Below, one piece after another: positions 31,972-33,286 of a DNA stretch of 64,000 nt. A program made the position numbers and the translations under genes. This stretch comes from Octopus bimaculoides. Lineage: Eukaryota. The notes under the pieces were generated by a model. The model searched no databases and was not told the origin of the DNA. It saw only the letters and a program-made list of their open reading frames with translations. Where the stretch lies: contig NC_068999.1 in the NCBI RefSeq assembly GCF_001194135.2, forward strand, positions 41,790,813 through 41,854,812, written 5' to 3'. Position 1 is the stretch's first letter. Every line of letters starts with the position of its first letter.

Positions 31972-33286
31972 CCATGAATATTCTACTTGGATTACTTTTA
32001 TCTACATGGCAGTTTTTTACTATCAGTTTAATATTATTAGCACTTGCACTAAGATTTTCTTCAGATGCCATCCAGGGTTTAGGACTGCTAGAAGAAGAAC
32101 TGTGCCACACTACAGGCACATGCTGGACTCGGTCTTCATGTGTGAAAGATTTAGACCGTCCAATAATGTAATTTGCTGGCTGATAGTGCTTGTTTTTGTG
32201 ACTATGTTTTAAATAAATTTCCGAATGTGACGATGGCAATAACTTGGTGTTCTGCGAATATCTGTTTCGAAAATTCTGAAAATCCTGTTGACCATTCGAA
32301 ACGTGAAAATCATTCTTTTGGTGCCTGGCAATGAATTTATTGTTGACAAAAAATTCTTTATTGGCAATTAACTTCTTTTGTCTTTGTTCCTCAAAAGATG
32401 GGGACTTTTGAAACATATTTGCATTTCTCCTTTCTGTTTTCCTCACGGAATCAAACTCATCCGATGTTTGGGTTGAGCTGCTGGTGGTGCTACTACTGCT
32501 ACTACTGTGAGGAATTTGTGATTTTAATTTGTTAGTGTATGCCTTTGATTTTTCTGGATAATCTTTCTGGAAGAACTTTGAATTTTTATTTTGGTAAAAT
32601 TTATGCTTCATTTGCTCCGTTTTAGCATCCTCGAGAAATGAATTCAATCTTGCAGTCTGAGATATAACCAATCCTTGTTTTGATTTTGGAGATGTCTCAG
32701 ATTCATCTGATGAAGAACTTGTGGAACTCATTCTCTCATTGGTTGAATTGTTTCTTGATATAGATTTAGTGTTTGTCAAGCGTATAGGCGACATTATAAG
32801 TAAATCCTTTTTTTCTTCTTCTTCCAAAACGCTGTCAATTGTTCTTAAGGCATCAACTTCATCTTGGTTTGAAACAGCATTCTGATTTAACCGTTTTTGC
32901 ATTGTTTTCTCCAGAATTTTCCGAATAGCTGTAATATCAGCCATATTGTCCAGTGACTTAGAAAGTCTTCTAGTCATTAGAGAATCATTTTCCTTTTCAA
33001 TTTCGTGTGGAATATTGTGGAAACTAGTTGACTCAAGTTTTCTCTTTTTCAGATATTCAGTGAGTTCTTTGTATAATTTATCATGTATATGCTCTGAATC
33101 TGTGAGTATTCCATATTTTCCAATGACAGCATGTGGCAGTTCATTATCTGGTGACAAGGGGGGAGATGAACTTTTGAAAGGATTTGATTTCTGGGAGAAA
33201 TCAAAATTGAATATATTTTGTTCTGAATGTTTCTGTGATTCAAAATCACCTTCCATGCTGAAGAAGATGTCTGATTGTCCCAACAT
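31972..33286 (-). CDS. Putative alternative first coding exon of the filamin gene (438 aa, Ser/Lys/Asn-rich, probably disordered)
   Basis: 1315-nt stop-free frame from ATG 33286 in AT-rich intronic DNA; same strand as filamin; ends ATG G|GTAAGT (consensus donor, phase 1), in frame with exon 24793; in-frame TAG 8 codons upstream of the ATG. Confidence 0.78.

What the first reader, a model, noticed from the sequence alone, without database searches (positions are those of the whole stretch)
31972..33286. Hidden 438-codon exon in the 26-kb filamin intron predicts an internally initiated filamin isoform with a novel disordered head
Seen: a 1315-nt open frame amid AT-rich, stop-dense intron DNA, on the filamin strand, ending ATG G|GTAAGT. 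Phase 1 matches the acceptor of exon 24793 (..RIFM-G-TPIIQKVG..). An in-frame TAG lies 8 codons before the ATG, and neither nearby AG (33311, 33321) joins the phase-1 upstream exon in frame, so it is unlikely to be a cassette exon. Predicted product: 1315+1541 nt = 951 aa; about 438 aa of Ser/Lys/Asn/Gln-rich sequence with short helical patches, then the last 5 Ig repeats, with everything upstream removed (including any actin-binding CH domains the long form carries). The join falls in the last strand of an Ig repeat. Intron read-through (GGT AAG TGA) would give a stand-alone 440-aa protein. Established: fly cheerio makes a short ABD-less isoform from an internal promoter. Inference: a lineage-specific scaffold isoform that annotation could easily miss.
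Basis: partly seen in the sequence, partly recalled or inferred. Interest (0 to 1): 0.85.

Follow-up and report, generated by a model that had tools for sequence, protein, structure and literature searches.

The report
Conserved alternative start exon inside filamin
A 438-codon reading frame in a large intron of a mollusc filamin gene is a real, conserved protein-coding exon that most likely starts a short filamin lacking everything upstream of the last five repeats, as known in flies, but no transcript has yet been seen.

Summary
Window 33286..31972 (minus strand) is an ATG-initiated open frame. At 448 codons stop to stop, it is the longest in the window (next longest 204), and it ends ATG G|GTAAGTGA.

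It is not chance and not a transposon. It is single-copy and has orthologues in one close relative and at least three distant ones. dN/dS is 0.20 and 0.38. Every indel inside the frame is a multiple of three, while the flanking intron carries many mixed-length indels.

All orthologues end xG|GTAAGTG. All have an in-frame stop 1-16 codons before the ATG. Wherever enough sequence is held, the next conserved exon downstream is the orthologue of filamin exon 24793, with a phase-1 acceptor.

The roughly 1 kb upstream is conserved above intron background. The joined product is 951 aa: a mostly disordered head with a conserved three-helix block, then five Filamin repeats.

The head has no relatives outside this lineage and no Pfam or PDB match.

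What is missing is direct evidence. No transcript, splice junction or transcription start site could be reached with these tools.

Best reading (about 0.7): an alternative first coding exon that gives a short filamin without the actin-binding domain (ABD), analogous to fly Cheerio FLN90. Main rival: a stand-alone nested gene or intron-retention product.

The parts
31972..33286 (-). Alternative first coding exon. It runs from the ATG to the split-codon G: 438 codons plus 1 nt, phase-1 end. It encodes a Ser/Lys/Asn-rich head with a conserved helical block (about residues 50-165) and a conserved NIKL(I/V) motif near the end.
   Evidence: ORF listing and sequence. Chance expectation about 1e-6. 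Orthologues P0001, P0002, P0003, P0007 and P0008. dN/dS 0.20 and 0.38. Indels only in multiples of 3. AF2 helices at 66-88, 115-135 and 140-165.
31964..31971 (-). 5' splice site GTAAGTGA. It is also the read-through ..GK-stop that would end a 440-aa stand-alone product.
   Evidence: G|GTAAGTG is identical in the window and in L001-L008, while the preceding codons differ. The TGA is replaced by TGG in L002. It is the closest match to the GTAAGT consensus among the ten donors of this part of the gene.
33287..34676 (-). Upstream flank: candidate promoter and 5' UTR. TATAAA lies at 33389..33384 (-103), there is no upstream ATG for 124 nt, and A sits at -3 of the start codon.
   Evidence: 88.8% identical to L001 over about 1.3 kb. 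The TATAAA is conserved in L001 at -98. In the distant relatives the equivalent ~1 kb is 0.68-0.81 identical, against 0.55-0.67 intron background. Function as a promoter is inferred, not shown.
24650..24793 (-). Filamin exon predicted to receive the splice. The phase-1 acceptor is ttgtag|GAACACC. Its first 8 residues, TPIIQKV(G), are the last strand of the preceding Ig repeat.
   Evidence: The orthologous exon is the next conserved block 1.8-1.9 kb downstream of the ORF in L002, L005, L006 and L007. The Pfam control maps ..PGTPIIQKV to profile positions up to 92/93 (protein 5).
14319..22686 (-). The eight remaining filamin exons: 22686-22561, 21606-21460, 20554-20447, 19378-19187, 19046-18765, 16588-16439, 15426-15259 and 14542-14319 (with stop). 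All are phase 1-1. Together with exon 24793 they encode 5 Filamin repeats and a short tail.
   Evidence: Gene model. Pfam PF00630, 5 stretches, E = 1.8e-88. PDB filamin matches.
50816..50989 (-). Canonical upstream filamin exon of the long form. It ends with a phase-1 donor (..GIEVPG|gtaagt) and is the normal partner of exon 24793.
   Evidence: The Pfam Filamin match of this exon plus TPIIQKV has E = 4.5e-9.

Best explanation
The ORF is an alternative first coding exon of the filamin gene.

**Proposed mechanism**
- A transcript starts inside the ~26-kb intron, at an internal promoter within the conserved ~1 kb upstream of the ATG. A non-coding leader exon is also possible.
- Translation starts at the ATG at 33286.
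- The exon is spliced from its consensus phase-1 donor (31972|31971) to the phase-1 acceptor of exon 24793.

**Predicted product**
- 951 aa.
- A lineage-restricted head that is largely disordered. It has a conserved ~115-residue three-helix block and a conserved short motif just before the junction.
- This head is fused to the last five filamin Ig repeats, including the C-terminal repeat that mediates dimerisation in other filamins.
- It lacks everything upstream, including any actin-binding domain (ABD) of the long form.

**Predicted role**
It would act as a scaffold or modulator that does not cross-link actin. It could dimerise with itself or with long filamin, and bring partners of the new head to ligands of the C-terminal repeats.

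**Shown versus inferred**
- Shown: the exon is coding and conserved, it has its own start codon and a conserved donor, and its position next to the filamin exon is conserved.
- Inferred: the promoter, the actual splice, and the function.
For: 1. **Real coding sequence.**
   - Chance expectation is about 1e-6.
   - dN/dS is 0.20 (window vs L001) and 0.38 (L002 vs L003).
   - The only indels in the ORF are 12, 30 and 3 nt.
   - By contrast, 1.36 kb of upstream flank carries 22 mixed-length indels and 1.8 kb of downstream intron carries 19.
2. **Start exon, not a cassette exon.**
   - The Met is conserved.
   - An in-frame stop lies 1-16 codons upstream in every species examined.
   - There is no conserved phase-1-compatible acceptor.
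3. **Donor.**
   - xG|GTAAGTG is invariant in all nine copies, across lineages whose synonymous sites are saturated (pS about 0.8).
   - The stop that follows is not conserved: it is TGG in L002.
4. **Synteny.** In L002, L005, L006 and L007 the next conserved block on the same strand is the orthologue of exon 24793, with the same phase-1 acceptor. No other conserved block lies between them.
5. **Upstream region.**
   - The ~1 kb upstream is conserved above intron background, while similarity collapses about 70 nt after the donor.
   - In the two close species there is a conserved TATAAA at about -100 and a leader free of upstream ATGs.
6. **Frame.** All filamin exons here are phase 1-1, so the join is in frame.
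7. **Precedent.** Cheerio FLN90 and other 90-100 kDa isoforms have eight repeats and no CH domains. Jbug-PC has four repeats only (PMC5173320; bioRxiv 10.1101/2020.10.13.337626).
Against: - There is no direct evidence of transcription, of a transcription start site, or of the 31972/24793 junction.
- Protein searches found only genomic-type, unspliced copies ending ..IGK. No protein joins the head to filamin repeats. This is weak evidence, because the database holds no filamin protein from this lineage at all.
- Phase compatibility alone is a 1-in-3 event.
- TGA directly follows GTAAG in most species, so a stand-alone product is equally encodable.
- The decapod-type copies have short upstream ORFs at -46 and -29, and a plausible acceptor 24-53 nt before the ATG in all species. 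The exon may therefore not be the first exon of its transcript.
- Pfam does not recognise the end of the head as part of a Filamin repeat.
Confidence: 0.7

Rival explanations
1. The ORF is an independent single-exon gene nested in the filamin intron on the same strand, or the main product comes from intron retention. It would make a stand-alone ~420-440-aa protein ending ..IGK. The GTAAGT would be coincidental or only occasionally used.
For: - GGT AAG TGA ends the frame in the window, L001 and L003-L008.
- All database copies are unspliced ORFs of 411-440 aa.
- The upstream conserved block would serve equally well as this gene's promoter.
- No junction evidence was found.
Against: - The stop is not conserved: TGG in L002 gives 12 extra codons. 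The seven bases GGTAAGT are invariant even though the neighbouring codons have diverged and synonymous sites are saturated.
- Sequence similarity collapses about 70 nt after the donor, so there is no conserved 3' UTR.
- The tight, conserved position immediately upstream of one particular filamin exon, across distant relatives, would be unexplained.
- The database copies appear to be genomic contigs, so their being unspliced carries no information.
Confidence: 0.2
2. The exon is an internal 'poison' or regulatory exon of the long filamin transcript, entered through one of the AGs 24-53 nt before the ATG. Including it would truncate long filamin after the repeat encoded at 50989..50816. The long ORF itself would not be the functional product.
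For: - Polypyrimidine-AG motifs lie shortly upstream of the ATG in all species.
- Reading in from the phase-1 upstream exon meets a stop within a few codons.
Against: This does not explain 420-440 codons kept open, with dN/dS of 0.2-0.4 and only in-frame indels, across distant relatives. An ATG about 6 kb into a long mRNA would not be translated by normal scanning.
Confidence: 0.06
3. The ORF is a chance open frame, or a relic of a transposon or virus.
For: The intron is repeat-rich, and other long frames in it are low-complexity or repeat-derived.
Against: - Chance expectation is about 1e-6.
- It is single-copy in the window.
- It has no Pfam or transposon domain.
- Only syntenic orthologues were found among 5.8 billion and 1.84 billion proteins.
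- It is under purifying selection.
Confidence: 0.02

Closest known systems
Drosophila Cheerio short isoforms (FLN90; 90-100 kDa forms)
   Same: An ABD-less filamin made only of C-terminal Ig repeats. FLN90 has an independent scaffold function at the neuromuscular junction (PMC5173320; bioRxiv 10.1101/2020.10.13.337626).
   Different: The fly forms keep eight repeats; here there are five. Here a 438-aa unique head precedes the repeats. The head has no detectable relative outside its own lineage, so the resemblance is one of gene architecture and is not shared ancestry of the exon. Expression is shown in flies and not shown here.
Drosophila Jitterbug Jbug-PC
   Same: A small filamin-type isoform made of only a few (four) C-terminal Ig repeats, with stage-specific expression.
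   Different: Jbug-PC consists exclusively of repeats. The isoform predicted here is about half non-filamin head.
Canonical long filamin (vertebrate FLNA/B/C type)
   Same: It shares the C-terminal repeats. PF00630 matches five times, and the best PDB matches are FLNA 19-21 and FLNA/B/C single repeats.
   Different: It lacks the rod upstream of the join and any actin-binding domain. It begins with an orphan last strand (TPIIQKV) of the repeat that the long form completes.

Membership tests
Filamin gene (C-terminal part) | Tandem Filamin/ABP280 Ig repeats (PF00630) | tested here: met
   There are 5 matched stretches, E = 1.8e-88, in the part downstream of the join. Filamin chains are the top PDB hits. 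Further repeat exons lie upstream, around 56.5, 55.7 and 50.9 kb.
Filamin gene (C-terminal part) | N-terminal tandem CH actin-binding domain in the long form | not testable with these tools
   The 5' part of the gene lies outside the window.
ABD-less short filamin isoform from an internal start (Cheerio FLN90 type) | The product contains only C-terminal Ig repeats and no CH domains | tested here: met
   The predicted 951-aa product has an orphan head plus 5 Filamin repeats and no CH domain. This is true of the model only; the protein has not been observed.
ABD-less short filamin isoform from an internal start (Cheerio FLN90 type) | Its own transcription start inside the gene | tested here: inconclusive
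   Support is indirect only:
- a conserved ~1 kb upstream block;
- a conserved TATAAA at about -100 and a uATG-free leader in the two close species;
- in-frame stops upstream of the ATG.

No CAGE or RACE data are available.
ABD-less short filamin isoform from an internal start (Cheerio FLN90 type) | mRNA joining the start exon to the downstream filamin exons | tested here: inconclusive
   No protein spanning the junction was found in the databases, but those databases lack any filamin protein from this lineage. The donor, the acceptor and the synteny are conserved.
ABD-less short filamin isoform from an internal start (Cheerio FLN90 type) | Start exon homologous to that of the fly isoforms | tested here: not met
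   A profile search of 1.84 billion representatives returned only the two lineage-internal clusters. There is no Pfam or PDB relative. The isoform is analogous to the fly forms and not orthologous.
Cassette (internal coding) exon | An acceptor that continues the upstream reading frame | tested here: not met
   An in-frame stop lies 1-16 codons before the ATG in all species. There is no conserved phase-1-compatible AG.
Transposon or viral ORF | Multiple dispersed copies and/or transposon protein domains | tested here: not met
   The ORF is single-copy in the window, has no domain hits, and only syntenic orthologues were found.

The most novel reading that the evidence does not exclude
A lineage-restricted orphan coding exon of about 430 codons, with a three-helix module that has no detectable relative anywhere else, was recruited as a new start exon onto the mechanosensory and dimerising C-terminus of filamin. 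It has been kept for the whole divergence between the window's lineage and its distant relatives. The locus may produce both a filamin fusion and, by intron retention, a free 440-aa head that could compete with the fusion for the same partners.
Probability: 0.4. Interest if true: 0.6.

Novelty: new variant of a known kind. Interest (0 to 1): 0.5.

Why it matters
Short filamins without the actin-binding domain have proven, distinct functions in flies, such as postsynaptic scaffolding. They are little explored outside insects and vertebrates.

A conserved short form with a large new head, in molluscs with elaborate muscle and nervous systems, would be a clear case of a lineage-specific exon giving an ancient mechanosensitive scaffold new partners. 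It would also be an easy target for RT-PCR, Iso-seq and proteomics.

For annotation, the exon sits far from other exons in a gap-ridden intron and has no homologues to guide gene finders. It may therefore be missed or called as a separate orphan gene.

Tried and rejected
1. **Searches for a spliced product.**
   - Three searches of the 5.8-billion-protein set were run: the head alone, an octopus-type junction query and a distant-relative junction query. They found only unspliced heads and gastropod filamins.
   - The set contains no filamin protein from this lineage, so the negative result carries little weight.
2. **Exact look-up.** The window's own 440-aa product is not on record.
3. **DNA scan for the junction.** The degenerate pattern ATNGGAACACCNATNATNCAA in metagenome contigs gave 120 or more chance matches, and none encodes the junction. 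The pattern was too loose for so large a collection, so this scan was poorly designed.
4. **Origin of the related contigs.** Literature searches for the run and assembly accessions found nothing. Species names, and whether any run is RNA-seq, remain unknown.
5. **Does the end of the head mimic the F strand of a filamin repeat?** The comparison was NIKLIVKN...IFMG against HNIFINYGGIEVPG. Pfam does not detect it in four species, while the canonical control scores E = 4.5e-9. AF2 draws two short strands there at low confidence. The idea is left as speculation.
6. **Structure route.** The AF2 model has mean pLDDT 44, too poor for a fold search, so none was run. The weak Pfam HSR hit (E = 0.03, below cut-off) and the PDB shikimate kinase hit (E = 1.1) are treated as noise.
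7. **A hidden further exon between the donor and exon 24793.** No conserved block was found by tblastx or blastn.

Full report
**1. The observation**

On the minus strand an ATG at 33286 opens a frame that runs to ..AGA ATA TTC ATG G|GTAAGTGA. The last exon base is 31972 and the read-through stop ends at 31964.
- Stop to stop, the frame is 448 codons. The next-longest open frame in any of the six frames of the window is 204 codons.
- Stop trinucleotides make up 5.2% of positions in the surrounding intron. The expected number of such frames in the whole intron is therefore about 1e-6.
- The frame has the same low G+C as the intron (0.35 vs 0.36) and occurs once in the window.
- The encoded protein is rich in Ser (15.5%), Lys (10.3%) and Asn (8%).

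**2. The filamin context**

The minus strand carries filamin repeat exons.
- The exon at 50989..50816 ends ..GIEVPG with one base left over and a gtaagt donor.
- The exon at 24793 follows ttgtag and reads (G)TPIIQKVGDG...
- I rebuilt the nine exons from 24793 to the stop at 14319. All have AG/GT boundaries, and all begin and end in phase 1.
- Pfam finds five Filamin repeats in that product (E = 1.8e-88). In a control, the canonical upstream exon plus TPIIQKV matches the Filamin profile to position 92 of 93, so the join does fall in the last strand of a repeat.
- The best matches among solved structures are filamin A, B and C repeats.

**3. Is it coding? Related sequences**

The protein search found three clusters:
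- P0001: 436 aa, 86% identical.
- P0002 and P0003: 426 and 422 aa, 55-63% identical over the conserved N-terminal block.
- Two further members of the P0003 cluster: P0007 (411 aa) and P0008 (422 aa).

Their contigs are L001-L008.

L001 is colinear with the window over 2.8 kb at 86% identity, flanks included, so it is genomic DNA of a close relative.
- Within the ORF the two differ by 123 substitutions and a single 12-nt indel.
- The 1.36 kb upstream has 147 substitutions and 22 indels of mixed length.
- Nei-Gojobori dN/dS is 0.20 (65.5 synonymous and 62.5 non-synonymous differences, on 258 and 1044 sites). It is 0.14 in the conserved block at residues 46-165.
- Between two distant-group species (L002 and L003), dN/dS is 0.38.
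- Between the closely related L005 and L006, the ORF has indels of 30 and 3 nt only, while the 1.8-kb intron has 19 of mixed length. ORF identity is 97.5%, close to the 98.0% of the filamin exon and above the 94.2% of the intron.

The frame is therefore maintained by selection in every lineage sampled.

**4. Is it a start exon with a splice donor?**

- All orthologues begin with Met and have an in-frame stop 1-16 codons upstream. No phase-1-compatible acceptor is conserved, so it cannot continue the long filamin reading frame.
- All nine copies end xG|GTAAGTG (ATGG, ATAG or ATTG before the cut).
- Between the window and L002, synonymous sites are saturated (pS about 0.8) and the preceding residues differ (SNPSRIFM vs GKTDVSI). 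The seven bases GGTAAGT are nevertheless identical.
- The following stop is not conserved. L002 has TGG and reads on for 12 codons.
- What is conserved is therefore the splice-site consensus, not the termination codon.
- It is also the best match to the donor consensus among the ten donors in this part of the gene.

**5. Where does it splice?**

- In L002 the orthologue of exon 24793 lies 1.9 kb downstream, with the acceptor tattcag|GAACACC, again in phase 1. It is followed by the orthologues of the next four exons, all on the same strand.
- L005, L006 and L007 show the same arrangement, with the exon 1.8-1.9 kb downstream.
- Between the donor and that exon, nothing is conserved between the window and L002 (tblastx and blastn). 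Only one 87-nt block is conserved between L005 and L002.
- The filamin exon is therefore the nearest conserved acceptor in every species.
- Because every filamin exon here is phase 1-1, joins to later exons would also be in frame. The exact acceptor is an inference.

**6. Promoter evidence (indirect)**

- Between L005 and L002, the alignable block begins about 970 nt upstream of the ATG and ends about 70 nt after the donor.
- Identity in 150-nt windows is 0.68-0.81 upstream, 0.74-0.87 in the ORF and 0.55-0.67 in the intron.
- In the window and L001, a TATAAA sits at -103 and -98. The leader has no ATG for 124 and 245 nt, and the start codon has A at -3.
- The distant group has no TATA box, has two 5-codon upstream ORFs, and has a polypyrimidine-AG 33-53 nt before the ATG. 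A non-coding leader exon cannot be excluded.

**7. The head**

- There is no Pfam family above threshold.
- There is no PDB relative.
- A profile search of 1.84 billion representatives returned only the two clusters from which the profile was built. The head is restricted to this lineage as far as these databases can show.
- AlphaFold2 gives a low-confidence model (mean pLDDT 44). It has helices at 66-88, 115-135 and 140-165 (pLDDT 65-85), which coincide with the conserved block. There are further helices at 204-238 and 298-320, and disorder elsewhere.
- A short motif, NIKL(I/V), is invariant about 20 residues before the junction.

**8. What could not be obtained**

No transcript, junction or start-site evidence was obtained.
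- The protein collections hold no filamin from this lineage: the best filamin hits were Aplysia, Arion and Nucella. Their silence about a fusion protein therefore means little.
- The window's own product is not on record.
- A DNA scan for the junction returned only chance matches.
- I could not identify the species of the window or of the related contigs.
The filamin exons of the distant group are 69-79% identical to the window's, against 58% for Aplysia.

**9. Interpretation**

The most economical reading is an alternative first coding exon that gives a short filamin without the rod and any actin-binding domain. It parallels Cheerio FLN90 (eight repeats, no CH domains, postsynaptic scaffold) and Jbug-PC (four repeats), but carries a large head of independent origin.

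The main rival is a stand-alone nested gene or intron-retention product ending ..GK. It cannot be excluded and may coexist with the fusion. It explains the invariant donor, the unconserved stop, the loss of similarity just after the donor and the fixed position before one filamin exon less well.

Chance, transposon and cassette-exon readings are rejected by the data.

**10. Verdict**

It is not yet demonstrated.

It is a new variant of a known kind of isoform. Interest is moderate, and the case is easily testable by junction reads or by the peptide IFMGTPIIQK.

Noticed in passing
window 16863-17474 (-): A 204-codon ATG-initiated open frame (MSVVRISSDIIKPF...) lies in a comparatively G+C-rich stretch of the filamin intron between exons 18765 and 16588. 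It is the second-longest frame in the window. It has no Pfam match. By eye it looks like a capsid/gag-type helical domain, but this is unverified.
   Followed up: partly
window 40000-43200: The GC skew is very strong here (+0.41 to +0.45 on the plus strand). On the minus strand this gives Pro/Ser/Thr-rich open frames of 150-200 codons in all three frames. A segment at 42330-42623 resembles a decayed endonuclease-type motif by eye, but has no significant Pfam hit. It is probably a degraded mobile element or low-complexity DNA.
   Followed up: partly
window 51120-51290 (-), also about 63845-63982, 58128-58382, 63544-63771 and 17790-17951: Dispersed repeat copies are present. Similar translated fragments recur (EGYPAIETMPNQ / [12 protein letters not shown]; GYSRRHLPKVPG.. 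/ GYSRRHLSKVPC..). A SINE-like element lies directly upstream of the acceptor of filamin exon 50989. ARAGORN finds no intact tRNA gene.
   Followed up: no
window 31617-31794 and 13 other N runs (4,427 N in all): These are assembly gaps. One begins only 170 nt downstream of the donor, and two more (25241-26139 and 26832-27437) lie between the donor and exon 24793. The intron length and its content are therefore incomplete.
   Followed up: no
window 14319-24793 and 50816-50989 (-): Every filamin exon examined is symmetric phase 1-1 and ends in ..G|GT. Skipping any exon, or any alternative join, would therefore keep the frame.
   Followed up: yes
L002 8984-10000; L005 366-1332: A conserved non-coding block of about 1 kb lies upstream of the head exon in the distant relatives. 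It is strongest at -1030 to -580 (0.74-0.81 identity). It has no similarity to the window's upstream region.
   Followed up: partly
L002 (ENA ERZ21867824, contig ctg119919l, 247.6 kb): An assembly held in the collection of ENA metagenome assemblies contains a 248-kb contig of animal (filamin-bearing, mollusc-like) DNA. This means host sequence is present in that assembly.
   Followed up: no
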